Below are positions 5,801 through 64,000 of a stretch of DNA of 64,000 bases, one piece after another (positions within the stretch are counted from its first letter, which is position 1; each line of letters begins with the position of its first letter). The position numbers and the translations under genes were made by a program. The DNA is taken from the NCBI GenBank assembly GCA_000708835.1, contig DF237421.1, positions 1 through 64,000 on the forward strand, written 5' to 3'. Under the pieces are notes generated by a model, which worked only from the letters and a program-made list of their open reading frames with translations, ran no database searches and was not told where the DNA came from. Source of the DNA: Klebsormidium nitens. Lineage: Eukaryota; Plantae; Klebsormidiophyceae.

Positions 5801-8653
5801 GAGTTTCTTGAGCAGTATGCGTTTGAGGACAGGCGTTGCTGGGTTGTTATCCAGATCAGAAGAGAGCCAATGCCCGCTCAATGGCTAGAATGCTCATCAA
5901 GGTCCTCATGAGTTGAGCCGATTGAACGTAGCAGCACAGGTCTAGAGTCTATGATAACGCGATTTCTGATCGTCGGGCCTCTGAGCATTGTGAGATTTGT
6001 CAGGTGAGGCGTTGGAGATATAATTCGTAGCAAGAAGGCACGCCACTCTTTTCACGAGAATTGCAATTGTGGTTGATCGACGGGTTTAGCAGAACCAGGC
6101 AGACAGTAATTAACAGTGAACGGACTTAAGCAGCGCTTAGGCAGATTTCCAGTTGCACAAATCTCTGCTCGCCGTGTGTAATGTTGCCGTTTGCGCTCTG
6201 GCAACCATTATGCAAATCGAGAGACCCGAACGCGTCTGCGCTGTGCGACATATATATGCACAAGGGGCGCGTCGGCGGCATGCCATACGAGCAAGAGACA
6301 ATGCATCATGCAGCTTCTAAGTTAGGCGCGTCCCGGAATTGCGGGTACCGTCACACTGCATAAACGGTCATTGGGCGGACATGCATGCATGTATGTGCAC
6401 CGTATGTGCAGCGTTTGTGGGAGCTATTGCTCATGTGGAGATCGTTGCGCTAGCCTACATATTGGACATGCTAAGCGGTCTGACTGAGCATCCACCTTAC
6501 ATATATGCACTGAGTGTTTTTTTGCATTTAAAGTCCTAGGCCGGGCTAGCCTGCGATCGATTCACTGGGGTTACAGAAAGCTTAGCTTAGTAAGGGCCTG
6601 GCCATGTCCAATCAAAGTTGGCAGGCTTTGACTACAGGCATTGTGGCCACGGCCGCTGTCACGGCATCATCGAGTCGGCAGCTCGTGGTACATGTCACAT
6701 TAAAATGATCGAATTAACAGGCCGTTGCTGTCTGGGTACAGTCATTTAGGCAACGCTCTACTCGCTCTTCTACGCCGCATGCGGTTTGGGGCAGCATGGC
6801 CGAGAATGTCATTAATTCTAGACGCATTCGTTCCGCATGCTCAAGCTCAGTGCTTATACTGGAAGACGTATCATGTAATGCCCCCGACCAAGCCACGTGG
6901 CTGCTCTATCCTGGCCGCGAAATTACGGCTGTTGTTTCCCAGGGAGACGAGGAACGGGGACATAGCGACCACCTCTAATCGGCACTTCTGCCCCTCGAGG
7001 TTGGTCAATGTTGTGGCTGCTGCCCACAACCGCGAATAATCCCTGCGATATTCAAAAGGAAGAAATCTTTCAAAGTTGACATTCTCGACTGGGCTGAGAG
7101 GAAGAACAGTCTCTTCCTTTCCAAGAAGGAAAGAACAACCAAGAGGAGACCGGCGGCGAGTTGACAGCATCAAGGTGAAGGGTTGTAAGCTCTCGAAGTA
7201 TGTCCCTCTATCTGAAATGGGCTTGTGCGAAAACGGTTTGGGAGCAGCTTTGTTGATTGAAGAAGGGATCAGACCACCATACAGGCCAGCGCGCGCTTCT
7301 TTGGCGCGCGCACACTGTGACCAGGATGCCTGCCGGGCTATGCCACAGATTGACTGGGCTTCACCGATCAATACGTCTGCTTTCTTAACCTAAAGAATCT
7401 CAACTTTCGATAGGAATCCGAACCTGGGCCGGCAAGAAGAGGAGAGAAAAGAAAATGAGATTTGACTCACTTCCGAAAACACTTGACAATGTGCACCCCC
7501 CTATCGGGTAGGAAGCTCAGGTCCTCAATCTGAAGCGCGCTGCCTGCTGCACCGTATGCTTGGACCAGTGCTGCCGAAAGGCAGCTAAGAAACTTCTGCG
7601 ATGACTCAACGGCGCCTGGAGAACCGTCGAGAGTCCTGCAGGACAACGAGTGATCATGACCTAGTTCCTGGCTATGTTGGAATCTTGAACCAGCTCTGCA
7701 TTGGAGCTGGCGAAAAGTTGGGTGAGGGATGTGAAGAGGGAATGTACTGAATCAGCCAGAAAGAGGAGCAGTTCAGAGTTCAGTGCGCACAGGGAAAAGA
7801 AATACTGAAAGACACCCACAGCTGAAAGCTGTGCCCACAACCGCTAAAGACCACTTTTGTCTGAAGTGTGCACAATTATGTGTTACAAGTGCTTGTACTG
7901 CAGGTCAAATATTGTGCAGCGCCCACAAGTGCATCGCTATGCATTCTGTCACTCATCAGGGCAGGATCCTTAGCTTGCAAAATTCAACTGCCAGGAAGTG
8001 CCACCACAACCGAAGACTTACATTCTGATCTGCAGATAGGTGTAGATACACCTCAGGGTCAACGTCTTCTGCTTGTGACAGGTGGCAGCTTTCTGCTGGC
8101 CGTTTGAATCTCCACCCGGAGCACTATCTATCTCCATCTATGAGAGTATGGGCTGGCGTCAGCGGCCGCAGCTCACCAAGGCATCAGCAGAAAGATATGC
8201 ACACTCAGCACAGGAAGCTTTGGGTGAACCGCCAAACAAACAAGCAGCAGTGGTATGTCCAAAGAGCGCCACTGTGTGCTGCACCGCGGCTCTCAGCGAG
8301 CCCTGTCTGCTTTCCTTCAGTGTCAAGAGGTGTTTGAGGCCCTTGAGTTTCCAGTGGAGAACCGCTGACAGCCGGCACAAACCCCAATTTCTTCTGAACA
8401 GCACAAATGCAAACACTCTGCACTGGGACTCAAGGCGCACTGCCCATCACAGCGCCAAGAAGGACATTGCTGTGCTCGGTGCGGCTTCTCGTGCTGCCCT
8501 CCTGCTTTGCACCACCTTCACCTTCGCCCCTGAGGTTGAAGGAGACGCTGCCCACATTGCATAATGCTGGTGACAGCTGGCAGCTCTGAATGTCCAAAGA
8601 ATCAAGTGTTTTGAGCTTGCATTGCAGAGCTTGCCGACATCCCCCGGATTAGA

Positions 8654-9296
8654 NNNNNNNNNNNNNNNNNNNNNNNNNNNNNNNNNNNNNNNNNNNNNNN
8701 NNNNNNNNNNNNNNNNNNNNNNNNNNNNNNNNNNNNNNNNNNNNNNNNNNNNNNNNNNNNNNNNNNNNNNNNNNNNNNNNNNNNNNNNNNNNNNNNNNNN
8801 NNNNNNNNNNNNNNNNNNNNNNNNNNNNNNNNNNNNNNNNNNNNNNNNNNNNNNNNNNNNNNNNNNNNNNNNNNNNNNNNNNNNNNNNNNNNNNNNNNNN
8901 NNNNNNNNNNNNNNNNNNNNNNNNNNNNNNNNNNNNNNNNNNNNNNNNNNNNNNNNNNNNNNNNNNNNNNNNNNNNNNNNNNNNNNNNNNNNNNNNNNNN
9001 NNNNNNNNNNNNNNNNNNNNNNNNNNNNNNNNNNNNNNNNNNNNNNNNNNNNNNNNNNNNNNNNNNNNNNNNNNNNNNNNNNNNNNNNNNNNNNNNNNNN
9101 NNNNNNNNNNNNNNNNNNNNNNNNNNNNNNNNNNNNNNNNNNNNNNNNNNNNNNNNNNNNNNNNNNNNNNNNNNNNNNNNNNNNNNNNNNNNNNNNNNNN
9201 NNNNNNNNNNNNNNNNNNNNNNNNNNNNNNNNNNNNNNNNNNNNNNNNNNNNNNNNNNNNNNNNNNNNNNNNNNNNNNNNNNNNNNNNNNNNNNNN
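8654..9296. other. Assembly gap (643 N)
   Basis: Run of N characters. The ORFs listed across it are artefacts. Confidence 1.
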
Positions 9297-9319
9297 CACA
9301 CCCTCAATGCCCTCAATGG

Positions 9320-9710
9320 AAAGGAAAAAGGGCCGGGGGCTTCGCCCCCCCCCCCACCTTTCCTCCTCCTATTGTGTAGTCAGACAAAGGCGTGTTTACT
9401 ACTGCTAGTGTTTAGCACGGCCATGGGCGCCTACGTCGGCTCTTGTGTTCTGCCCATCAGAGTGGGGGGGCAGGGGGGCTCGGGCCCCCCCACATCACCC
9501 CCATCCCCCCACACGGCCCTCGGTCCTCCCTCGGTGTCCTCGAAATAAAAGGAACATTAAGGGGAGCTTCGCCCCCCTCTGCTTCTTTCCCTCCTCCGCT
9601 TATGTGAACCAGTTGACATGTGCGCGTGTGTTATAAAAGCGCAGTTATGGGCGCCACCTCGGTTCTTGTGTTCTGCTCATCAGCATGAGGGGGGCTCCGT
9701 CCCCGTCACA
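9320..9710. repeat. Two degenerate ~230-bp tandem units with G/C hairpins next to the gap (possible repeat or transposon end)
   Basis: GGGGGCTTCGCCCCC (~9335-9349) recurs as GGGGAGCTTCGCCCCC (~9562-9577). ATGGGCGCCtacgTCGGCTCTTGTGTTCTGCCCATCAG (~9423-9460) recurs as ATGGGCGCCaccTCGGTTCTTGTGTTCTGCTCATCAG (~9648-9684). Confidence 0.6.
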
Positions 9711-10922
9711 TTGCCCCAACGTCCTTGTGAAAAGGTAAATGGTGGGGGAGAGGAGGGGCTGTACTCGATGTTCATGCTAGCTACCTTGTACTTTTGATAA
9801 GGGAACTTAAGCAAGGCTTCAGCGCCCTTCCGTAGTCGTGCCAATGGTTTCAACTCCAACATGGGCGAGATTAAGTCTGGCAACTTAGCCTCTTAGCTCC
9901 CCGGCCCGATCTTGCACTAGGGCCAGCTCCGTGGTCTCCCCAAGAGCCCCAGCTAGATGCCACCGTAATCTTTCGCAGAAACATACCGATCCTTGGATAC
10001 ATGCTCAGATCCGTGTAAGAGAAAACGCATGGGGAAGTACATGCCGTACAATTTCAAGACGGGTTCAAGACTCAGAGTCTTCTTTCGGCCTCTCAGTTGA
10101 CTAGGCTAGCCGCCCCATGAATTGTCTGATCAACGCATGATCTAATTGACGGGATGAAAGAATATCTTGCAGAGCAATTCGATCGTGCACGGCGGACTTC
10201 GTTGAGTGCCTTGAGCCGAATATGTGAGCTTATATACATCCATCGGCTATGCAAATTTGGTGCAATCGATTAGGTTGGACACAATATTGTACCTGCCTCG
10301 ATCCGCTCTAAGTTATAATTTCCGCTAGCTCTTCGTGCCTGTGTAGCTGACCAAGGCCGGCGCTTCTAGGCCCTCACCGCGTTACATGCTGTAAATCATA
10401 CGATGACATATGTGTCAATCAAGATCGAACGCGTCAATATCTCGACAAGCTTCTTCTAATGATGTTTAGAATTGCCAAACCTTTCAGTGCCTGCGTCTGT
10501 CATGAACTTGAATGAAGCTTGAAGCTGTAGAATCAAGGGCCACAGGATCATACCTCGGAGAACTAATGTCGACAGGCCAGGCCCGGGTTTGGATGCTAAC
10601 CGCGAGCACATCATGGCCGGAATGGAATTGAAGGCATCGGTCATCTCGCCCTTGAACATGCAGACTCTCAATGAGAGTGCTAAAAATGGAGCGCACATCT
10701 ACCGAGTCCGAAACACCAGTGGCATGCATAGTTGGTGATTGAACCGGGCCCGGAGACAAAAACCAACAGAATGGGCTCCCTTTCAATTTCAACACTAACT
10801 GATGTGGCAGATTAAAGAGGACGGTCGGCTGCATGTCCGACTTTTAATTATGCCGACCTGGGCTACGACGTTTATTCTAGCCAAACACAATCATTTCTAG
10901 CGTCTGTACACGTCATTTTTTT

Positions 10923-52808: not shown

Positions 52809-55800
52809 AATCAAGGGGTTGATGGTCCCGTCTGAAAATTCTCTTTGGTAAATCTGACTGAGGCTGAAAGTGCGTATGTGATTTACTCTGATGAACTTCA
52901 CAAAGAATAGGGCAAGTAGCTGATTCAGGCCCCTTGGGTTCAACTGCCTGAGTTCTGAGAATGTTTGCGCGACCAGCTGCGCATGGTGTGTCGTTGTTTG
53001 AACAGCTGCATCCGAATCAGCTCGTCAAATTAAGCTGCTTATCACCCAAGCATTGCTACCCTGAGCTGCCCAGCTCTGAAAAGCTGAGATGCGGTCTACA
53101 TTAAGTGCGCACCTAGTTTGTTGCCCTCGAGGCTGGATTCTTGCATCTCAATTCAGGCTCGGGACTCTAGTGGCCTGCTTTTGTTTTGCAGTTTTTATAC
53201 AAGGGAACCGAAATACGGCAAGAAGAACCAGCTCTTCCCTCCATAATATGAATCTTCTGGGTTGTGTCCCCTTCGTATCTTCCAGCTCAAAGCTACAGCC
53301 TACAGCTTACTGGAGACGCGACTCATGGCAGGTGCTTCCAAGCTCAGCTCATCCGTTTCACCCGGCGCCCTTCATGGCGAACCAATCCCATGCATGAATA
53401 CAGTTTTTAAGTTCCTTTCTTTGTTTTCATTCTACCTCGGGCAGCAGGCTATTAGGAAGGGGCGTTTTGTGTGAAGCTTCAAGAGGGTGTTACTGTTACA
53501 GAAAGGAAGAGTACCTATTTCTGCATAGGACTGAAGCACGCCAGGGTGGCACGCCTTAACCCGCTTACTAACAGTATAAAGTCCCCATAACGCCGCAGTA
53601 ACCAGTGGTTTACCTGCCACGCTGAAATAATTCCCCCTGCCTTAAATACGGGGGTGTACAGTGTTGGTACTTTAACAGTACTACCTAGTATTATCAAAGC
53701 ACGATTCGCAGGCTTGCCTCTTGCCAGTGCATAGTACATACTGCACACAACGACACGCGACATACCGTTGAACCTTCTGCTGCGCGCGCGCAGGCAGGGA
53801 CAAGAATGGAGGGTCAGATGAGATATCGACGGCTGTGTTTCTATGTCAGAAAGTGACGTCCGATCGGGTGCTTCAGGAATCAGGATTACACCGGCGCCGT
53901 CCGGCGGCTTCTAGCTTGACGTCACACCTCTGTCAGATGTTGCCGATGTGTTCATCAAAAGAAATAATTCGTCCAGAGAACAAGCTTCCTAGTGGCTAGA
54001 AAAGACGCACAAACTAGGATCCGAGGGTCTGTTTCTAATCAGAATTCAGAATAAAAGTAGGCTAAAATCGAAAGTCTAACGTTATCGCGTACATGTCAAC
54101 GGGATACGGTCGTCAAAGCAGTACGGCTCTTCTCATTGGTCAAAGTCGCGCGACCAAATACTTATTACCCGATCTTTGAGGGAGTGCAGACTTTCGTCAT
54201 CCGCCAAGTGGCGCACTGCCATTGAACCTGGGCGCAACGAGAGATTTGGGCAACCTCTCTCGGGGCTTACGGAAAATGCTTTCCTGGCTTGACGGTAACC
54301 GCTCAAACTTGCGTGGAAGGGGGGCCGCCATGATTGTGTGCATTGTGCAACCCCTCTTCTCCCCAGCCTGTCACTTGCAGCTTCCTATTGGGTCCAAAAT
54401 TGACTTCAGAGGGACTTCAGAAGTTAGAAGTTAGAACCCATTTCTGCTAGTGGTTGCGTCACGGTATTACGCGGGATTGTCCAAAGCACAAGCCAGCCGG
54501 TTAGCTACCTCGACGCTCACGGCGCTTACCCCCATATCAAAAGCCCAATCTGTGATTGCTAACAAGAGTTCGCAGGGTACATATATATTCGACGTTTAGG
54601 GGTTTGCTCCTGGCCTTCTCTGCAGTCAGCTGCTTTCACGAACGTTCCAGCTCCAGGCCCTCTCCTACAGTACAAGTCACTCCCTTTGAAGCCTGCTGGT
54701 GCCTCGCAATACCCATTTATACTGAGCTGCGAAGAATTTTGAGGTCTCAGCTGGGTGGCGATCAACAGAAAGCAAAACGTGCACTGCAATCAAAAGAGGC
54801 TTTTGGACACACGCCTGCTTTACTTACAAGCGCTGACATGCGATCGTAGAGACTGATCCAGGCGATCATGCCGCTCTTCCCTCACATGCCCGCTGCAGAA
54901 GCTTAACATTGATAACACAAGACCTGTGAGACAATGACGGGCCTTGTTGAACCCCGAGGCAATGATTGACGAGCGGGCGGGCGGCGGCACCTCTAAACGC
55001 CTGGCGGCTGACTGCTGACGTCATCGCACACGCAATGCCACAGTAAGGAGCAATGCGCAAAAAACCCCCGAGATGCGGCATTCGAATTCACTACAAAACA
55101 GACTCAGCCAAAGTGGTATGAGGCGTAGATCAGTGAAGGAAGAAGCAAGCAGGCTCTGAGGGACTGGAGGCCTTTCCTGAGGGCGTGAAGGTGAGAAAAA
55201 GAGTGGGTTGACGGCAGGAAGTCTGAATGCAACCTTCACATGTGGAGTGTTTCTTTGATCCAACGCACAAGACGTCGGACGCTAGGTCTGAAATGCATTG
55301 TCTGCAATTACAAGTAAGTTTTGCAGGCCTAAAGAGAAAGAAAAGATCTGAGGCAGGCTTCCTTGGGTTGACTCCGATTTTCTCTTATAAATATTTGTTG
55401 TGGTTGGAAAGTTTTGTCAGAGTGCACTGTTTCGATTCTGTCATCTTATGTGGACACTTCTCTAGATGGAGGGTGTAATGCCGAGGGTGGTGCAGTGAGA
55501 GGAGCTAAGTGGAAGAGAAGCGGACTTATTCTGAGCTAGTTTGACACCTCATTGAGAAGTGAGATAATGCTGTGCATCTTATGGATCGTCTTGTTTGCAG
55601 AGGCACTTCTGTTAAACAGGCGTACGTTTTCCAGTGCTTCTCCGCTTCTTTCCGTGCTGTTGCCTTCTAGATAAGGGACTTTGAACCCGCACGCTCCTTC
55701 AGTGATAATTAGCCCTACCTGTGCGCCTTCAGTGTTTGCTGATGTAAGCTGTTTGTTTTGTCCTCTTCTTCTTTGGTTTCTCCTTGTTTCTATGGTTTCA

Positions 55801-56456
55801 AAAGTCCCTTGGGTCCACTTTTTAGCCAGTGCTTGAGAAGCATACCCACCTGAAAAAGGCATGGGGGGATGAGGAGAATTGTGCAAGCTGTCTAAGAGCT
55901 AAGACATCTAAGAATGATGTCAAAGAGAGGTTGTGGCTTGAAGGTAACAATGCTGAGGGACGCTGAAAAGGGTAAACGCACTCCAGGTTTTGCACAGTGG
56001 CAGAATAGGAAGCTCTTCCAAGCAGACTACGAGTACTGTTCCAAAGTTTACCCACGGAACCTTTTTGAAGAGTCACTGCGCTTTTGAAGCTGCATCTCCG
56101 CTGGTGATCATTTTCTGAAAGGTGTCGTCACTTTGAGGAGCTCGCTGAGGTGTCCTTTTGTGTACTGAGCCAAACGCCTTGACTTTCGTGTGACGACATT
56201 TGTCCAATTGCAGTGCTCTTTCTCAGCCACAGTTTCCTGCTCTAAACGCCGGCGCAGTCAGGTGATCTATGGAAGCTTCTGATTGAAGTTCTTTTGCTCT
56301 TCGCCTGTCCTACTGCTCCCTACTACCCCGATCAAGCCCGGAGTAAGGCAAGTCTTTCCCTCTCACACAGGCCCGCAATTGCCCCAAGCTAACGAACCCC
56401 GTTTTGGCTCCTGCAGACTGCTGATTTCTCCAACTTCATAAAAGAGCAGTGCCCGA

Positions 56457-59400
56457 ATGGGAAACATGAATGGAGAGCCTACTAGAGACGAGTTACGAGA
56501 GCGGGCAAACCGAGCGTTGGCGGACTTGGCAGCCTATCAGGGGGGGGGCAGCTACGTCTGGGTAGTGGTTCGCGAAGGGGAGAAAATAGGGGGGTGCTCC
56601 ACCAACCTGCGGCCGTACCAGGACGCGTTTGAGAACGAGGTTATGCAGGCTGTGTGAGTGCAATTCCGGGGGACTTATCGTTGACTCTCTCCTTTTTCCC
56701 CCAACATGACCGGCTTTCGCTCCACGCTTTGCCACTCCTCATTTTCTTTTCACTTACTCTGCTGAAGTCCCGTTGACTCCCTCCTTTTCCCCCCCACATG
56801 AATCGGCTTCTTCGCTCCACGCTTTGCCACTACTCTGTTCTCTCCTCTTCTTTCTCGTTGCTCTTGCTACTCGAATTTGATGTTCTTTTCACTTACTTTG
56901 CTGAAGTCCCGTTGACTCCTTCGTTTCCCCCCCACACGAATTGGCATTTGATCCATGCTTTGCGACTCCTATGTTTTATCTTCTCCTTCTCGTTGCTCTT
57001 GCTACTTGGGCTGACGTCCTTCTTCTTGACTAAGTTGCCCAAGCTACTTAAAAGGCCCCCGGATAGGAATGTATGCCAGTCTCTTTGAGTGTCTCGTGTG
57101 CAATGGCAGAAGGAGAGGAGTTTGACGGGTGAAGACTTTTTGTCACGTATGGGTTGCTGGGTTGCTGTCAATCCTAAGTCCGTTCGGCCCGAGGGGGTGC
57201 GATGGTGAGACCTCTGCAGATGTTATATGGTCAAGGGCTGAAGCTGCCTTTGCCGACCCCGACCTTTGACCCACTCTTTCCCCACGTAAAGCTGCGACGG
57301 AACGCTTGAGCTTGGCTTTCGCACAAACTGCAGTTTTAAAACCCGAGGCAGAGTCCATGGGTCTTTGTCTCGAAATTTCCTTCACCTACCCCTCTTCGTA
57401 AGCCTTGCTCTGCCTGATAAACAATCTGCTCAAACCGCTTCGCAAAGAAACGACTCGATTCCTTGTACGTATGACTTTGCTTTTGCTGGCAGATATCTTG
57501 CTGTTTGCAGAGCGATTTACATACGTGCGACTGGGGACGCGCTGCCCAATACGGAGGCGAACTTTGGTTAGCATATCACACGACTCCTTATACGTGTGAC
57601 CTTGCTTTCTGCAGACCGATGGAGATCTGTGCGATCGGCAACGCGCTGCCCAAAAAGGAAGTTGACCTTTGCGTATAGGATATCGTACATTCACTTATAC
57701 GTACAGTTTCTGATATGTACGCCCTTGCTTTCCGCAGACCGATGGAGATCTGTGCGACTGGCGACGCGCTCCCAAAGACGGAGGCGACCTTTGCTCAGAA
57801 CACCAGGACAAGGCACACGGACCTGCACCCCATCGTGGCCGTTCTCATGGCGAAGCTGAACGAGATCAACGGCCACAACTCGCCCAGGACAATGGCCATC
57901 AAACACCCCGACACGGTGAGCCCAAATGATGGGGCCCGCTGATTCGCATTCTCTGTTGCCGAAGCGGTTGATTTGTTTTGATCATTGTTTTTCCGAGTGA
58001 GAAGGTGAGGCTTAAAGCAGTGAAGAGTTTGAACGTGATAAGGGGGTTTCTGCGAAATCGGACAGCCTCCGGATCGCCGCGCATCTGCCCACTTGGACGT
58101 AAAGTTAGCGCTGCAGCAGTCGATTGGCCAGTCTCATATCGGATCTCCGACTTGTCGAGCCAGGTCCTCTTTCATCGGGAATGGTGTTCTTAACGTTATA
58201 GCTCCTTCCAAATCGATTGAACCAGAACCGTTTGTTTCCGGGAGCACATACATTAGGAGAACCTTCCGAAGCTGTTCCAATCAAGCCTCACCGGTCAAGT
58301 GCTTTGTATCTCAGCATGTCTATCCTCTGAACGGATATGTTTGCAGAGAAAGTCTTAATAATGATTCCAGACAGACTCTCACCTCGCAAGTAGTTCTTCC
58401 CCGCAGCTTCGTCTTTGGTTGTCGGTCCTGAGGAGTGCATAACTCTGCGGAAATCCTTCTTTGGAGCTTTCTAGGCAGGCTCTCATATCTGCAGTTCCTT
58501 CTTCCCCGCACCTTCCCTTCCGCATCACCTAAACGTTTCTTCAAGTCGTTCCGGGGCAGACTCTCTGTTTTTTACCCACTGTAAATCGAAATACAAATTT
58601 GTATTGATCCTAACACCGGCTCCGCCTGGAAAGTTCCCGCTTTAAGCCCATGAACATGCGGTCTCAGAATTCACCCCGGATTAAAGATCGATCGGACTGA
58701 AAAGCCCGCTTTTCTGGATCGAGACTTGTTTCTTCCTTCATGCACTGAAGACGGGTCTGGAAGTGGGTTCTTATGAACTGTCCCCACAGCTCCCCTCCTG
58801 GTTCCCGCATCACCTGTGGTGAGGACTTTCGCTTCCAAGGCGTTTCGAGGCCGACTCTCACTTCGAAACTCCTTTTCCCTGCAGCTCCCCCCCTGGTTTC
58901 CGCAACATCTGGAATTTTGAAGGCGTTTCCAGGCAGAATCTAAGTTTGTTATTGCATTTTGTCCGCAGCTCCTCCCCTGGTTCCCGCATCACTTAGAATT
59001 TTGAAGGCATCTTCAGGCAGAATCTAACTTTGTTATTGCTTTTTTTCCGCAGCTCCCCCTCTGGTTCCCGCACCGCCCCAAAGTCTACGCGGAGCGCACG
59101 CAGGCCATGTCCCTCCCGCAGCTCTTCCAGGTCCTCGACGCCATCTTCGGCCACGTCAGGCGCCACGTGGCGGCCATCCATTCGCTGCACTCCGCCGTGG
59201 CCTCCCACTTCCGCGTCTCCTCCGTGCCCACGCGCACGCGCGCGTGCTTCGAGGCTTTCTTCGACTTTCTCAGAAGGGAGGCCGAAGAGATCGGGGGAAA
59301 GCCCCGGGGGGCGAGGAGTACCCCCCGGGGGGGCGTTTCTCCCTCGGTTGGCACCCCCCCGGGAGCACGACTACCCGCCGCGAAAAGCCCTGGGGAAGCG

Positions 59401-60093
59401 AACGGGACAACCCCCCGGGGAGGCCCACGACGGCGCGGGCTCAGGAACAGCCCGACCCCGGAGAGGACTCCGGCGGGGGGGTTGTTTTTGCCGTCTCCGG
59501 GCCCCCACCCGTCGGAGATGGTGGGCGATTTGGACGAAGATGTGCCCATCCTGGACAATCCCAAGTCGACGATCACCCGGGGGCGGCGGGCGAAGAAGGG
59601 CGACCAAATAGCGGGCGGAGCAGGCAAAGCGTCGCCAAAGACGGAGTCAGAAAGTCCCTGGGCCGAAGAGGATGAGCTTGCGAGGGGCGTGAGCCGCTCG
59701 TACAAAAGAAGAAGGGAGAGCTCGAGAATTCCGCCCGGGAGTTTCGGAGGAGCCGGGACTCCCGGAAAGAGAACTAGAGTGAAGACCGAAGTGGACGACG
59801 CGTTCGCCGGGAGGGCTGAGTCCGACTTGAGCGCGCACTCAAGCACGCCACGTGTCGACGTGCCGTTGGCCATGGCGGAATGCGCTGAAAGCAGGCCGGA
59901 GATCCAGTCCAACGGGGTTGGGGTCGAGCATTCCGGCGGAGCGGGACCGGAATTGGGCGGAAAAGGTTGGGATGACGGAGACAGCGAACATAGTTTTGAC
60001 CAGTTATTGAATAACGTGGACTGGGAGCAGGTAGAGAATGGATTGAGGGCGGAAACGGAGGACGCCGGAAGCGGCGGAATGGATCGGGGCTGA
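56457..60093 (+). CDS. Putative transcription factor with a divergent EIN3/EIL-like N-terminal domain and long disordered C-terminus (471 aa, 3 coding exons)
   Basis: join(56457-56653, 57738-57915, 59053-60093) = 1416 nt, phases 2 and 0, with an in-frame stop upstream of the ATG. Motifs GSYVWVVVREGEKIGGCSTNLR, DLHPIVAVLM, LPLWFP and VLDAIFGHV..HVAAIHSL parallel recalled EIN3 [38 protein letters not shown] and VLTAVIKHM..DIAKIRKL. NLS-like KRRRE and KRTRVK. Gene model confidence is high; family call is moderate. Confidence 0.65.
56681..57015. repeat. Three degenerate intronic tandem repeats (~90-130 bp)
   Basis: gttgactc..cc/ttttcccccc/acaYga..cgctccacgctttgccact..cttttcacttactYtgctgaagtccc occurs three times in intron 1 of the EIN3-like gene. 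Confidence 0.75.
57495..59035 (+). repeat. Echo duplications of the exon-2 and exon-3 acceptors of the EIN3-like gene
   Basis: Exon-2 decoy AGs end at 57510 and 57614 (real 57737). Exon-3 decoy AGs end at 58789, 58884 and 58968 (real 59052), each followed by a CTC-CNC-NNN-TGG-TTY-CCG copy. Confidence 0.9.
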
Positions 60094-62361
60094 CAATTAA
60101 GTTGGCGAGATGGTAAAGCTGTAGACTCGGCTGACTGAAGCGCCACATTATAAGCAGGATTGAAAGACTTGCTTTCTGGTTAAAACATGGGCTACGAGAT
60201 TTTGGCTGCCTGCTTTCATGTGATTTATCACAAACACTTGCTAGGAGGGCCTGTCTAGATGCACACCTTGACATTTATCTGCTGTGTTTGCTTGACACTG
60301 ATAAGGCGTTAAAGTTTCTCGAGCGGAGAGACTTTGTATAGGGAAGCTGGGTAAGTGTAAGTAGAGTGACGCGAACTCGGGATATCCTGATTTGCTCTCC
60401 ATATAGGTATTTTCAATCTCTTCGTTCTTTTGCGTTACCTGGATGAGAAGCCCGGCAGAGTCGAAACGATCAGACGCGATTGACCAGAGCCAAACGGATC
60501 CAAACCCCGCATAAGGTGCCCATGCGCTTGGAACCCCCGCCGACGAAGCCCGTAATGCATAAGACACTGGTGAGACTTCCAACTCAGGGCAGTAGGATAC
60601 GAGAGCTGAGATGAAAGACTGCCCGCTTATATTTGACACGTTTCAACATGTACCGTGCCTGATGCACGCTCGGAGGACCACCACCTTACCCTTTGTAAGC
60701 CGATGCATGATGGCATGCGTGCTTCTTTCCGTCAATTATCCTGTTTCGAAACTGGCATAATCTAATAATTTTATGTTACACAGGGTATACACGCAACCGT
60801 GAAGACGTGGTGTCCTGCAAAGACTTTTGTTGGCCGCCCTCATAACATGGACTTACATGCACCACAGATCTGAATGTACAAAGCATTGCCATGTGCGCTG
60901 CGCTCCTCTGCAACCATGCAGAATTGTAAACTTATAAACTTATGTTTCCCTGACGCGCTCAAATCCGGAGATGTTAATCTGCCACCTTCATCAAAACTTC
61001 GATGGTGCCTGGTGATCATATCACTTGATCGATGCCGCCCCGAGCGTGCAGGGCGGCAACTTCTAAGCGTCCGGCGATTATTGCATGCCCTGCGCTGGCC
61101 CGCCCACCCGGAGAACGGACTCATGTTGAGAAGAGGAAGATTTTAAATTGTCAACAAGGAACTCAAACCGTACCCCGCCTTGCCTATAGGAACTTCATGC
61201 GATGCAGTGACTGCAATCATTGATTCGTACGTCAAGACAGTTCAAGTTCGTTGGCATGCAGCACGGAATGGAGGTCGCTTAGAAAGCACCTCGATCACAC
61301 GCAACGCATGTACTGCACAACTCCGAGCGCACTGAGCAGCGGCAGCGGGCCGGGCAAAACATATCCACAACATGGTTTCGCATTGCCCACACCTATACTA
61401 TCGTTTTGGACGAGCTTCGAACAAGTGACTCACTGTCAGCGCGCATGTGGTCTGACATTGTCAATAGCATGCGGTATCGATTGCACAACAGACCCGGCGA
61501 ACTCAATGGCAATGAGGATATTGTACCCATCAAGGACTCGACACATATGCCATATCTCGGTACGTGCCATTTCTGTAGTTTCCGAGTGCCAACATGCTCA
61601 TGCGACTTAACAGTGCGTGTCGAATGCCCGTTTGTTGACTAAGATTTTAACAACGAGTCGAGTCCACCAAGGATAGCACCATCCGGATGATGGTGTGTTT
61701 GGCCAAACACGACGTGCTGACATTGTTCATCGGCTATCGCTCTTCTTACAAAAGTTAGAATCACTGAAGTGGAGGACTCAGGAATCGGACCTTGCCAACA
61801 TTAAGAGTGCAAATCTACTGAAAGAATGGTTATGTGAAGCAGCATTCTAGCCTTGACCACTTCTTATTTTGCAGCCACTATAAGTGTAGCAGTCCACAAG
61901 CTCGGTGTATATGCTCAGACAAGATATACCTAACGTACGGGCCACTCGTTGCCCAACTTGCTTTCAAACTTCCGCACTCGTCTCCATCAAAGACCACTTT
62001 CTCAGGCCACCAGAGTAACAACCGCTATCGAACTCAGCACCGCACCCCCAATACCGCACTCGCCCAAATTTCCTTCAAACCTCCACGTTTACCTCCAACA
62101 CTGGCCACTTTCTCCAAGCAGAGTAATAATTATTTACTTAGCTCGACACCGCACTCACACGTACATTTTAGCTTTTGGTTGGGAACTTTGCTATTGCGGC
62201 ATAGTGTTTGCCAACCTCAGAATAAACGCCAATGCAACACATGGTATCTGTCCTGAACAGTGCGGCCCCCCCCTTAGATTGATGCTATATCAGGCTTTCC
62301 GAGCTATTAATGTTCCAGCTTTGCAACCCGGATGAGCATGCGCACCAATAAAGCCACTCCC

Positions 62362-64000
62362 TCAAACTGCAACCCTACGCGGCAGTACCGCTGTGGCTTC
62401 CATTTCCAATCCGTCCAAGTATGCATCAACGGCTCTTCGGAGCTCAGTATTATGGAGCTCGCCTTGCGATGCGTGCCACTGCGCTTTCAACTCCCGAATG
62501 TGAAAGTATTCTCTCCGGGCTTTTTGGAAGACGACATCGAGAACGTGTAGCAACTCCGCCTTCTCCATTTCTTCCCTAATGGTCCAGTACTTGGTTGGGT
62601 AAGGAAACCAATCGGGTATCTGAGAAGGGTAATGACGTCAGCCATTTTGTCAACTCGAGGTCCACCGAAAGGAAGCCTTCTGGCTAAAGGGCGTCCAAAC
62701 AGTGATCTTTGCGTTCACAAGCGCTAGCTAAGAAGCCGTACCACGGTGATGTTAAAGCCCCCTATGAAGTGATTCAGAGAGCTTTCGAACAGGGCCAACG
62801 GTTAACGACGAGAGAGCATGAGCAGGTTCGAATGTCGTAATGAATAACACATTTGTTGCCAGCATTTGTTGCCAGGATCAGACACCGTAGCTTGGATCAC
62901 TCTACCAATGCCGCCAGTACAGTCTTCGTACAGCCTTTACGAGTGTGCTTTCCCTCGCTGCACGCCGCATAGTTGTGAGATTGTGTCCATCAGCATCCGA
63001 TTCCAATGACCCGCACAGTTGGCTTTTCCCGCACCCAGATAATAACCTGCCACAACTAGATTCTTTCCGTGATTTAGTTCCGCTCACCGTGCTTGGAGCC
63101 GGTAACCCTTGGGAGGACGTGATGCGGTTCATCCCCCTCACGAGCGCTTCGACGACGACCGCGAGGTCCGCCCGAAGCTTTGACGGCCCCTCGGACAGTA
63201 CTACGGACGGGGATGTGCTTTCGGACGGGGACGGAGAGCGGACAAGGCTTCGCAGGACGTTTGAGGCGTTTACTTTTCCGCCGTCGACTGGGGCATCTTG
63301 CAATCGGCTGCTTGTGAAAAGAGGATTGCATAAGTAAGCATTGGTTCCGTAGCTCTTCAAAAACCCAAAAACCTGGCTCTTTTGAAGATCAGCTCGTAGA
63401 GACGTCGATGGAAAGAAGAGGTTACGTACTAGCAAGCTAGAAGTCTAAGGAGAGTCCGAATGAAGTCAGTCAGTCAAAGAAGCAGCAATTGCCTCAACAA
63501 GCAACCGTACAGGTAGGATTCGAGTGGATTCAAACAGCGCTGGCAGTGTCGGATTCGAATGGCAGAGTCAAATGGGTCTGAAGGGGCACGGATTATCCTC
63601 ATGAAACAAAAAATCCTATCTTCCTTGGCTCGTTCCCTCCACTTGTACTTGATCCAAGCATAACGAGTGCAAACATCAAGCAATCCCTGACGATCCGACT
63701 CATTTCGGACACTTTTTGAGAGCAAGAACATCCCGATCAAACAAGGGTTGGAAATGTCACACGATCACCGAGCTTGAAATCTAGTCCTAGGGGGTTCGCC
63801 ACCCTGGACGATTTTGGCGGATATATAGAGACCCCCGGTTCTCTGAGGACTGCGGTCCGGAACAAGAGAGCAAAAAAGATAATGGAACAAAAGAAGAACC
63901 GACCTTGAGATCGCAACCTCTAGGCCCTCGACTAGCGCCTCCGTCACGGGCGTGAGGCGCGGCGAGCACCACACGCGCCTCCCTCCGCTCCCGCCGAACA
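62362..64000 (-). CDS. Second divergent EIN3/EIL-like paralog (5' partial, runs off the window end)
   Basis: Exons >64000-63904, 63307 (or 63310, NAGNAG)-63088, 62619-62362; phases 2 and 0 as in the + strand paralog. Peptide ...VWCSPRLTPVTEALVEG...LRADLAVVVEALVRGMNRI...PST|IPDWFPYPTKYWTIREEMEKAELLHVLDVVFQKARREYFHIRELKAQ...RRAVDAYLDGLEMEA aligns with CSTNLRPYQDAF, HTDLHPIVAVLMAKLNEI, PDT|LPLWFP, MSLPQLFQVLDAIFGH and RACFEAFFDFLRREA. Confidence 0.65.

What the first reader, a model, noticed from the sequence alone, without database searches (positions are those of the whole stretch)
56457..60093. Highly divergent EIN3/EIL-like DNA-binding domain in an unannotated-looking algal gene
No ORF-track fragment is recognisable alone, but the spliced protein follows the recalled EIN3 domain in order across ~190 aa: G-F/Y-V-aromatic-xxx-E-x-x-K...G-x-S-x-N-L-R, then the L-x-x-hydrophobic-x-A/S-L-M helix, then the P-x-W-aromatic-P motif, then VLxA-hydrophobic-xxH followed by hydrophobic-A-x-I-x-x-L. 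The basic EIN3 signatures RRKKMSRAQD and YKKPHDLKK are not conserved, implying altered or lost DNA specificity. The C-terminal ~250 aa are G/P/R/S/E-rich with NLS-like motifs and an acidic-aromatic end (FDQLLNNVDWEQVE), typical of an activation domain. A PxWWP core also occurs in animal NRF1 and fungal DUF2841 proteins, so this may be a separate, ancient-looking branch of the same fold rather than an ethylene-pathway component.
Basis: partly seen in the sequence, partly recalled or inferred. Interest (0 to 1): 0.8.

Follow-up and report, generated by a model that had tools for sequence, protein, structure and literature searches.

The report
Hidden EIN3-fold regulator gene in Klebsormidium
This expressed alga gene, filed as a "hypothetical protein", is predicted to fold like the DNA-gripping part of the plant ethylene switch EIN3 although no sequence search recognises it, and it belongs to a small gene family seen so far only in Klebsormidium-type algae.

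Summary
The gene is real. It is annotated in Klebsormidium nitens as hypothetical protein KFL_004720090 (468 aa).

Sequence methods do not link it to EIN3, NRF1 or DUF2841. Pfam gave nothing on 19 family members at E<=10, and single-sequence and profile searches of PDB sequences were also blank.

Structure does link it to EIN3:
- An AlphaFold2 model has mean pLDDT 82, and above 90 for residues 90-200.
- The top match in the ESM Atlas is an EIN3 cluster (TM 0.53, residues 21-205).
- Residues 1-67 weakly resemble MADS-type dimerisation modules. The NRF1 link stays weak.

EIN3's basic patches are not conserved. An ortholog keeps the introns and shows purifying selection (dN/dS 0.15 in the domain). 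Sequence relatives (19 among 1.84 billion representatives) are all Klebsormidium or unlabelled.

Best reading: a nuclear, probably dimeric regulator of the EIN3 fold superfamily, with changed or lost DNA specificity.

The parts
54498..55190 (+). 5'-UTR exon. The 3' end at 55190 is firm.
   Evidence: Contigs continue 527-695 nt upstream of the acceptor. Their last 30 nt map uniquely to 55159-55188. A GTGAGA donor follows 55190. Nine short uORFs would lie in this leader.
55191..56416 (+). 5'-UTR intron (GT..AG)
   Evidence: Loose ends at 56415 in all four runs, with their upstream continuation at 55159-55188.
56417..56653 (+). Exon holding the start codon (ATG at 56457; the annotated start is 56466). 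It encodes the N-terminal helix / beta-hairpin / helix module (P0001 residues 1-62).
56654..57737 (+). Coding intron 1 (phase 2, GTGAGT..CAG). It contains tandem echoes of the acceptor plus the start of the next exon, at 57497-57578 and 57601-57682.
   Evidence: Joint 56653>57738 in four runs. Repeat families D1, D3, D6 and D7. The echo acceptors read into stops after 20-21 codons.
57738..57915 (+). Middle coding exon (P0001 residues 63-122). It covers the linker and helices 1-2 of the EIN3-like core, which starts at residue 75 = 57772.
   Evidence: Joints on both sides. dN/dS is 0.05 against the ortholog. Model 75-204 aligns to EIN3 173-304.
57916..59052 (+). Coding intron 2 (phase 0, GTGAGC..CAG). 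It has three echoes of the acceptor plus 'LP.WFPH' exon start, at 58781-58816, 58876-58911 and 58960-58995.
   Evidence: Joint 57915>59053 in four runs. Repeat families D2, D4 and D5. The echoes read into stops after 10-11 codons.
59053..59298 (+). Rest of the EIN3-like core (P0001 residues 123-204): the PLWFP loop (59056-59070) and three long helices.
59299..60093 (+). Disordered-looking C-terminal tail (residues 205-468) and stop codon. Features: basic NLS-like clusters at 59578-59601, 59704-59721 and 59764-59784; an island at 59473-59562 that is identical over 30 aa in the ortholog; and an acidic/aromatic end at 59992-60033.
   Evidence: Composition and pI, motif coordinates, ortholog alignment and dN/dS of 0.34 for the tail and 0.20 for the last 60 aa. 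The 3'-UTR runs beyond 60300.

Best explanation
KFL_004720090 is an expressed, selectively constrained nuclear-type protein. Its first ~205 residues form a two-part domain of the EIN3 fold superfamily.

Domain layout:
- Residues ~1-66 form a small helix / beta-hairpin / helix module. By analogy with EIN3 residues 113-173 and with MADS and NRF1 dimerisation modules, it should pair two chains through a shared beta-sheet.
- Residues 75-204 form a helical core with the same topology as the EIN3 core DNA-binding domain. It includes the proline/aromatic loop, which reads PLWFP here and PPPWWP in EIN3.
- The ~260-residue tail looks disordered. It carries basic nuclear-import-like clusters, one strongly conserved short motif and an acidic/aromatic end of the kind found in activation regions.

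Most likely mechanism: the protein acts as a dimeric DNA-binding transcription regulator. Its target sequence should differ from EIN3's, because EIN3's basic patches BD II-IV are not conserved.

It is one member of a small, fast-diverging gene family detectable only in Klebsormidium-type algae. It is probably a very divergent offshoot of the EIN3/EIL lineage rather than a component of ethylene signalling.

Shown: the gene model, expression, constraint, family and predicted fold match. Inferred: homology to EIN3 (as opposed to mere fold likeness), dimerisation, nuclear location, DNA binding and activation.
For: Gene and expression:
- Spliced contigs from four studies show the exact joints.
- The product is identical to the annotated protein.
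- A K. subtile Trinity transcript encodes a 38%-identical full domain.

Constraint:
- The ortholog in L005 keeps all three coding exons, the splice sites and the open frame.
- dN/dS is 0.15 for the domain, 0.05 for the middle exon and 0.34 for the tail.

Fold:
- The AF2 model has mean pLDDT 82.3 and pTM 0.68; residues 90-200 are at 92-97.
- Foldseek gives 4zds probability 0.93-0.94 and TM 0.61-0.63 normalised by target length.
- The top ESM Atlas row is 'Protein ethylene insensitive 3' (PF27048 + PF04873), TM 0.53, 143 residues, query residues 21-205.

N-terminal module:
- EIN3 82-352 is a dimer while 174-306 is a monomer (PMC4564277).
- EIN3 dimerisation maps to residues 113-173 (preprint 10.64898/2026.07.10.737652).
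- The NRF1 dimerisation domain is MADS-like (PMC10810270).

Other:
- The core of this paralog is basic: pI 10.15, net charge +5.
- Neighbours of this gene and of three paralogs are ordinary cellular genes, not transposon genes.
Against: - No sequence method links the family to EIN3. Pfam is blank for every member at E<=10. Single-sequence and profile searches of PDB sequences do not list 4ZDS or NRF1 at E<=10. The protein-language-model search gave no usable hit.
- The fold match rests on one predicted model built from a shallow alignment of 19 partly fragmentary sequences from one genus.
- EIN3's basic domains III and IV, which are needed for its DNA binding, correspond here to largely non-basic segments.
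- Several paralog cores are neutral or acidic, with pI 5.2-6.6. DNA binding may therefore be lost in part of the family.
- The N-terminal module alone modelled poorly (pLDDT 58).
- No DNA-binding, localisation or dimerisation data exist.
Confidence: 0.6

Rival explanations
1. The protein has an EIN3-fold domain that no longer binds DNA. It would work through protein contacts, for example as a partner or decoy that pairs with canonical EIL proteins or with other family members via the N-terminal module.
For: - EIN3's basic patches BD II, III and IV are not conserved.
- The N-terminal module is acidic (pI 4.7), whereas the matching EIN3 region carries a basic domain.
- Several paralog cores are neutral or acidic.
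- The proline-rich loop of EIN3 has been proposed as a protein-interaction site.
Against: - This paralog's core is still basic (pI 10.15, net +5).
- The tail has the usual make-up of a transcription factor: NLS-like clusters and an acidic/aromatic end that is conserved in the ortholog.
- Strong purifying selection falls on helices 1-2 and on the loop. In NRF1 the corresponding kind of element contacts DNA.
Confidence: 0.2
2. The likeness to EIN3 is not homology. This would be a lineage-specific helical protein whose predicted model happens to resemble, or was drawn by AlphaFold towards, the EIN3 core. The shared short motifs would then be chance.
For: - All sequence and profile tests were negative.
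- Identity in the structural alignment is only 18%.
- The alignment behind the model is shallow.
Against: - EIN3 was named before any structure was computed, and it then came out first among 48,161 chains, with a gap of almost 5 Z units to the next hit and 87% of the target domain aligned.
- A second library of predicted models also puts EIN3 first, and that alignment extends into the N-terminal module.
- The EIN3 fold was described as unique to EIN3/EIL.
- The organism is a streptophyte alga reported to have canonical EIN3/EIL genes (PMC9136324), so a source for duplication is at hand.
Confidence: 0.12
3. The family is carried by, or derived from, a transposable element. The scan noted an EIN3-labelled gene inside a KDZ transposon elsewhere in this genome. 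On this reading the protein would serve the element rather than the cell.
For: - An earlier scan note, s1-277591, which I did not check.
- The family is multi-copy, fast-diverging and lineage-restricted.
Against: - This gene lies between a WD40 gene and a paralog. Three other paralogs lie beside an acyl-activating enzyme gene, a ribosomal protein L16 gene and a dienelactone hydrolase gene. No transposase was called nearby.
- The gene has a spliced 5'-UTR, conserved intron positions and an ortholog under purifying selection.
Confidence: 0.06

Closest known systems
EIN3/EIL transcription factors of streptophytes (Pfam PF27048 EIN3_N + PF04873 EIN3_DNA-bd; structures 4ZDS, 1WIJ)
   Same: - The same order of elements: helix pair, long proline/aromatic loop with P-x-W-[WF]-P, then three helices.
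- An N-terminal beta-hairpin module ahead of the core, where EIN3 has its dimerisation region.
- A long variable C-terminal half.
   Different: - No detectable sequence-profile membership.
- Basic domains II-IV are absent.
- The domain sits at the very N-terminus, without EIN3's acidic and basic leader.
- The loop between PxW[WF]P and the next helix is about 12 residues shorter.
- The gene has introns inside the domain.
- The family is found only in Klebsormidium-type algae.
- No evidence ties it to ethylene signalling.
NRF1 / Ewg / P3A2 (Pfam PF10491 Nrf1_DNA-bind; structure 8K4L)
   Different: The superposition is poor (rmsd 12 A, TM 0.22-0.25), there is no Pfam hit, and the NRF1 DNA-binding part has three helices. 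I could not compare the two halves separately, so kinship stays open.
MADS-box domain (SRF, MCM1, MEF2, SEPALLATA3; Pfam PF00319)
   Different: The scores are weak (rmsd about 5 A). This part of the model has pLDDT 55-74, and modelled alone it failed. There is no MADS sequence signature and no basic DNA-contacting N-terminal helix (pI 4.7).

Membership tests
EIN3/EIL (PF04873 EIN3_DNA-bd, PF27048 EIN3_N) | Significant match to the family's sequence profiles | tested here: not met
   hmmscan against Pfam-A at E<=10 gave no EIN3 model for the three exon products, for P0001 (whole and residues 1-205), for ten relatives, or for all 19 members of A1. The A1 profile does not reach the 4ZDS sequence at E<=10.
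EIN3/EIL | [quoted passage not shown] | tested here: met
   [not shown]
EIN3/EIL | Proline-rich loop with PPPWWP (EIN3 211-216) | tested here: inconclusive
   P0001 has PLWFP (residues 124-128) in the long loop between helix 2 and helix 3. Paralogs have PAWWP, PTWWP, PAWFP, PDWFP or PAYFP. The position fits the ranges of the structural alignment, but no residue-level alignment was available.
EIN3/EIL | Basic domains BD II (88-94), BD III (238-248) and BD IV (265-274), needed for DNA binding | tested here: not met
   Definitions come from PMC4564277. The segments in the matching places (P0001 about 129-145 and about 156-173) hold 3 K/R (R130, K132, R136) and 2 R plus histidines. The N-terminal helix region has net charge -4.
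EIN3/EIL | N-terminal dimerisation region ahead of the core (EIN3 113-173) | tested here: inconclusive
   The model has helix / hairpin / helix at residues 7-62. The Atlas EIN3 alignment starts at residue 21. No solved EIN3 structure covers this part, and the module modelled alone gave pLDDT 58.
EIN3/EIL | Binding to EIN3 binding sites, and a role in and turnover by the ethylene pathway (EIN2, EBF1/2) | not testable with these tools
   Needs DAP-seq or EMSA, genetics and protein-interaction assays.
NRF1/Ewg (PF10491) | Match to the Nrf1_DNA-bind profile | tested here: not met
   No hit at E<=10. No NRF1 chain appears in the PDB sequence searches.
NRF1/Ewg (PF10491) | Fold of the dimerisation and DNA-binding domains (8K4L) | tested here: inconclusive
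   [not shown]
DUF2841 (fungal, PF11001) | Match to the family profile | tested here: not met
   No Pfam hit. No structural test was possible.

The most novel reading that the evidence does not exclude
This Klebsormidium family, plant EIN3/EIL and animal NRF1/Ewg would all descend from one old eukaryotic type of transcription factor. That ancestor would have been built from a MADS-like beta-hairpin dimerisation module followed by a helical DNA-binding core with a P-x-W-W-P loop. The alga family would be a sequence- and structure-level stepping stone between the other two. The neighbouring gene, which has two such modules in one chain, would be a covalent version of the dimer.
Probability: 0.2. 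Interest if true: 0.8.

Novelty: new variant of a known kind. Interest (0 to 1): 0.55.

Why it matters
EIN3/EIL is treated as a streptophyte-specific family with a fold of its own, and its origin is open.

This finding points to a second family with the same predicted fold that is invisible at the sequence level. It occurs in an early-branching streptophyte alga that is reported to have canonical EIN3/EIL proteins as well. The fold therefore appears to have diversified beyond ethylene signalling.

The family offers natural variants that lack EIN3's basic patches, which could help find out which parts of the fold read DNA. It also gives a concrete handle on the suspected kinship between EIN3, MADS-like dimerisation modules and NRF1.

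Practically, five or more Klebsormidium 'hypothetical proteins' gain a testable function.

Tried and rejected
- Pfam on the separate exons, on whole proteins and on all family members: no relevant hit.
- PDB sequence searches with one sequence and with the family profile: only chance-level rows.
- ESM Atlas search by sequence features, and the Atlas's own model (pLDDT 0.35): uninformative.
- Modelling the N-terminal module alone: pLDDT 58.
- Transposon origin: the neighbours of this gene and of three paralogs are ordinary genes.
- Literature: I found no paper linking EIN3 with NRF1, and none on this family.
- Profile-profile comparison with EIN3: not run, because no tool gave me EIN3 sequences and I did not type any from memory.
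- A second, profile-based run of the word-index protein search: not run. The family profile cannot reach the EIN3 sequence even among the 177,635 PDB sequences, so it could not do so among 5.8 billion.
- Scan look-up by sequence: blank.
Full report
**What is there**

The window comes from Klebsormidium nitens scaffold DF237421.1.
- 56457 (annotated start 56466) to 56653
- 57738 to 57915
- 59053 to 60093

The introns are canonical GT..AG, in phases 2 and 0. The spliced product is letter for letter the GenBank protein KFL_004720090, 468 aa, 'hypothetical protein' (P0001). The gene is therefore annotated but unnamed.

**Expression and gene model**

I laid contigs of four runs from four different studies on 56300-60300.
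- Each run holds one contig that skips exactly 56654-57737 and 57916-59052. Only thin contigs (depth 2-4) lie inside the introns, against depth 6-72 on the exons. Intron-less contigs can only come from RNA, so the gene is transcribed and spliced as proposed.
- All four contigs also run on upstream of 56415 into sequence that maps to 55159-55188. This defines a 5'-UTR intron, 55191-56416.
- It also implies a leader of roughly 700 nt, which would hold nine short uORFs. The transcript's 5' end is inferred, not shown.

**Family and constraint**

A full HMMER scan of 1.84 billion representative proteins with residues 1-205 found only 19 proteins at E<=0.001. Those that carry a label are K. nitens paralogs (KFL_009430030, KFL_007950010, KFL_008650010) and a K. 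subtile Trinity transcript with the whole domain at 38% identity. The rest are ORF fragments from unlabelled Logan or JGI contigs.

One Logan contig (L005) carries the ortholog.
- It has the same three coding exons, the same splice sites and an open frame.
- The introns are largely unalignable.
- Nei-Gojobori dN/dS is 0.15 over the domain, 0.05 in the middle exon, 0.34 in the tail and 0.20 in the last 60 residues.

The family alignment A1 shows these conserved columns:
- H-x-[DE]-L-x-P-I-[VI]-A
- P-x-W-[FW]-P
- Y-A-x-R-x-Q
- V-x-D-x-I-F-x-x-[VI]-R
- T-[RW]-A near the last helix

**Sequence tests of the EIN3/NRF1 idea**

All were negative.
- Pfam (a copy that includes PF04873 EIN3_DNA-bd, PF27048 EIN3_N and Nrf1_DNA-bind) gave no relevant hit at E<=10. 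This holds for the exon products, the whole protein, residues 1-205, ten relatives, and every member of A1.
- phmmer, and a profile of A1, against all PDB sequences did not list EIN3, EIL3 or NRF1 at E<=10.
- By the usual sequence definition this is therefore not a member of the EIN3 family.

**Structure test**

AlphaFold2 on A1 gave a model with mean pLDDT 82.3 and pTM 0.68. Residues 90-200 are at 92-97, and the first 70 residues at 55-74. Its elements in order are:
- helix 7-24, hairpin 31-36/39-44, helix 46-62
- a loose linker
- helices 77-84 and 89-106
- a long loop with two short helices and PLWFP (124-128)
- helices 143-157, 161-177 and 182-203

The searches gave these results:
- Foldseek itself gave weak E-values (0.6-0.7) but probability 0.93-0.94 and target-normalised TM 0.61-0.63 for 4zds. 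NRF1 (8k4l_B) was its first row, at E 0.36.
- The shape search of the ESM Atlas put a cluster named 'Protein ethylene insensitive 3' (EIN3_N 96%, EIN3_DNA-bd 92%) first. It had TM 0.53 and 143 aligned residues spanning query 21-205, so the N-terminal hairpin module is included.

- The target was named in advance.
- The gap to the second hit is large.
- Coverage of the target domain is near complete.
- A second library agrees.

According to Song et al. the EIN3 fold had no structural relatives outside EIN3/EIL (PMC4564277).

**How the parts map**

Song et al. place PPPWWP at EIN3 211-216, basic domain III at 238-248 and basic domain IV at 265-274. They report that EIN3 82-352 is a dimer while 174-306 is a monomer.
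- The ends of the alignment (75 = 173, 204 = 304) and the position of PLWFP fit a shared helix pair, Pro/aromatic loop and three-helix layout. The loop after the motif is about 12 residues shorter here.
- The places of BD III and BD IV are occupied by HRPKVYAERTQAMS and HVRRHVAAIHSLHS. These hold a few K/R and histidines, not lysine/arginine clusters.
- The core is nevertheless basic in this paralog (pI 10.15, net +5). In other paralogs it ranges from pI 5.2 to 9.6. The N-terminal module is acidic (pI 4.7).

**N-terminal module**

The NRF1 structure paper reports that NRF1's dimerisation domain is closest to the SRF MADS domain and pairs through a four-stranded intermolecular sheet (PMC10810270). 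A 2026 preprint narrows EIN3's dimerisation region to residues 113-173, just ahead of the core. This makes dimerisation through the hairpin a reasonable inference.

**Tail**

Residues 206-468 are 54% G/P/S/R/E. The features are:
- basic clusters at residues 298-305, 340-345 and 360-366
- a 30-residue stretch (263-292, AGGLFLPSPGPHPSEMVGDLDEDVPILDNP) identical in the ortholog, within an otherwise fast-evolving region
- an acidic end (residues 401-468, pI 4.1) with SFDQLLNNVDWEQV, which reads SFDELLTDVDWDLV in the ortholog

The layout is the usual one for a nuclear activator, but that is inference from composition.

**Reading**

The best-supported account is a dimeric, nuclear regulator of the EIN3 fold superfamily, with altered or possibly lost DNA specificity. 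It belongs to a Klebsormidium-restricted family that most likely split from the EIN3/EIL lineage and diverged beyond sequence recognition. K. nitens is reported to have canonical EIN3/EIL proteins as well (PMC9136324).

The rivals are a non-DNA-binding partner protein, chance or model-driven fold likeness, and a transposon-borne gene. The neighbourhoods of four family genes argue against the transposon idea.

I found no paper describing this family or an EIN3-NRF1 relationship in the searchable library.

**Earlier scan notes**

It has also noted similar candidates elsewhere in this genome. I used those notes only for the organism's name, the pointer to the neighbouring paralog and the transposon rival.

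Noticed in passing
window 62362-64000 (minus strand), continuing to about 67131 in the scaffold; L001:15897-20666: The convergent neighbour gene (annotated product 627 aa, no Pfam hit) encodes two complete copies of the same three-exon module in one chain. Module 1 holds ...TYVFVVAGDG..., ...AELHPIVAVMIDSLN... and TPTWWPHSPKKYAERTQ.... About 250 linker residues follow. Module 2 holds ...CIWMLFGGSGGRRVWCSPRL..., ...ADLAVVVEALVRGMN... and IPDWFPYPTKYW.... It may be a covalent version of a dimer. Metagenome ORFs P0006 and P0007 show the same read-through, from a module-1 end into a module-2 start.
   Followed up: partly
window 57497-57578, 57601-57682 (intron 1); 58781-58816, 58876-58911, 58960-58995 (intron 2): Both coding introns end in tandem 'echoes' of their own acceptor plus the first 30-80 nt of the next exon. 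Every echo keeps a pyrimidine tract and CAG, and would read into a stop after 10-21 codons. The spliced contigs use only the last, authentic acceptor. A further CAG at 59016 would add 12 in-frame residues. Parts of the echoes are also present in the ortholog contig L005.
   Followed up: partly
window about 54498-55190 and 56417-56456: The 5' leader is long (about 730 nt if it is one exon), is split by a 1226-nt intron, and holds nine short upstream ORFs. This could mean translational control. The transcript's start was not determined.
   Followed up: partly
protein P0013 (JGI metagenome ORF, 570 aa): It matches residues 69-99 of the query eight times over. It looks like a tandem array of exon-2 echoes, from a relative's intron, read as an open frame. 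Its Pfam hits (DUF975, TetR_C_24) are probably repeat artefacts.
   Followed up: no
window 8001-10000: A 2-kb stretch with G+C 0.38, against about 0.51 elsewhere in the window.
   Followed up: no
window 56702-57371 and 58042-58711: Thin contigs (depth 2-4) lie inside both introns in three of the four runs. They are probably unspliced precursor RNA or a little DNA in the libraries.
   Followed up: no
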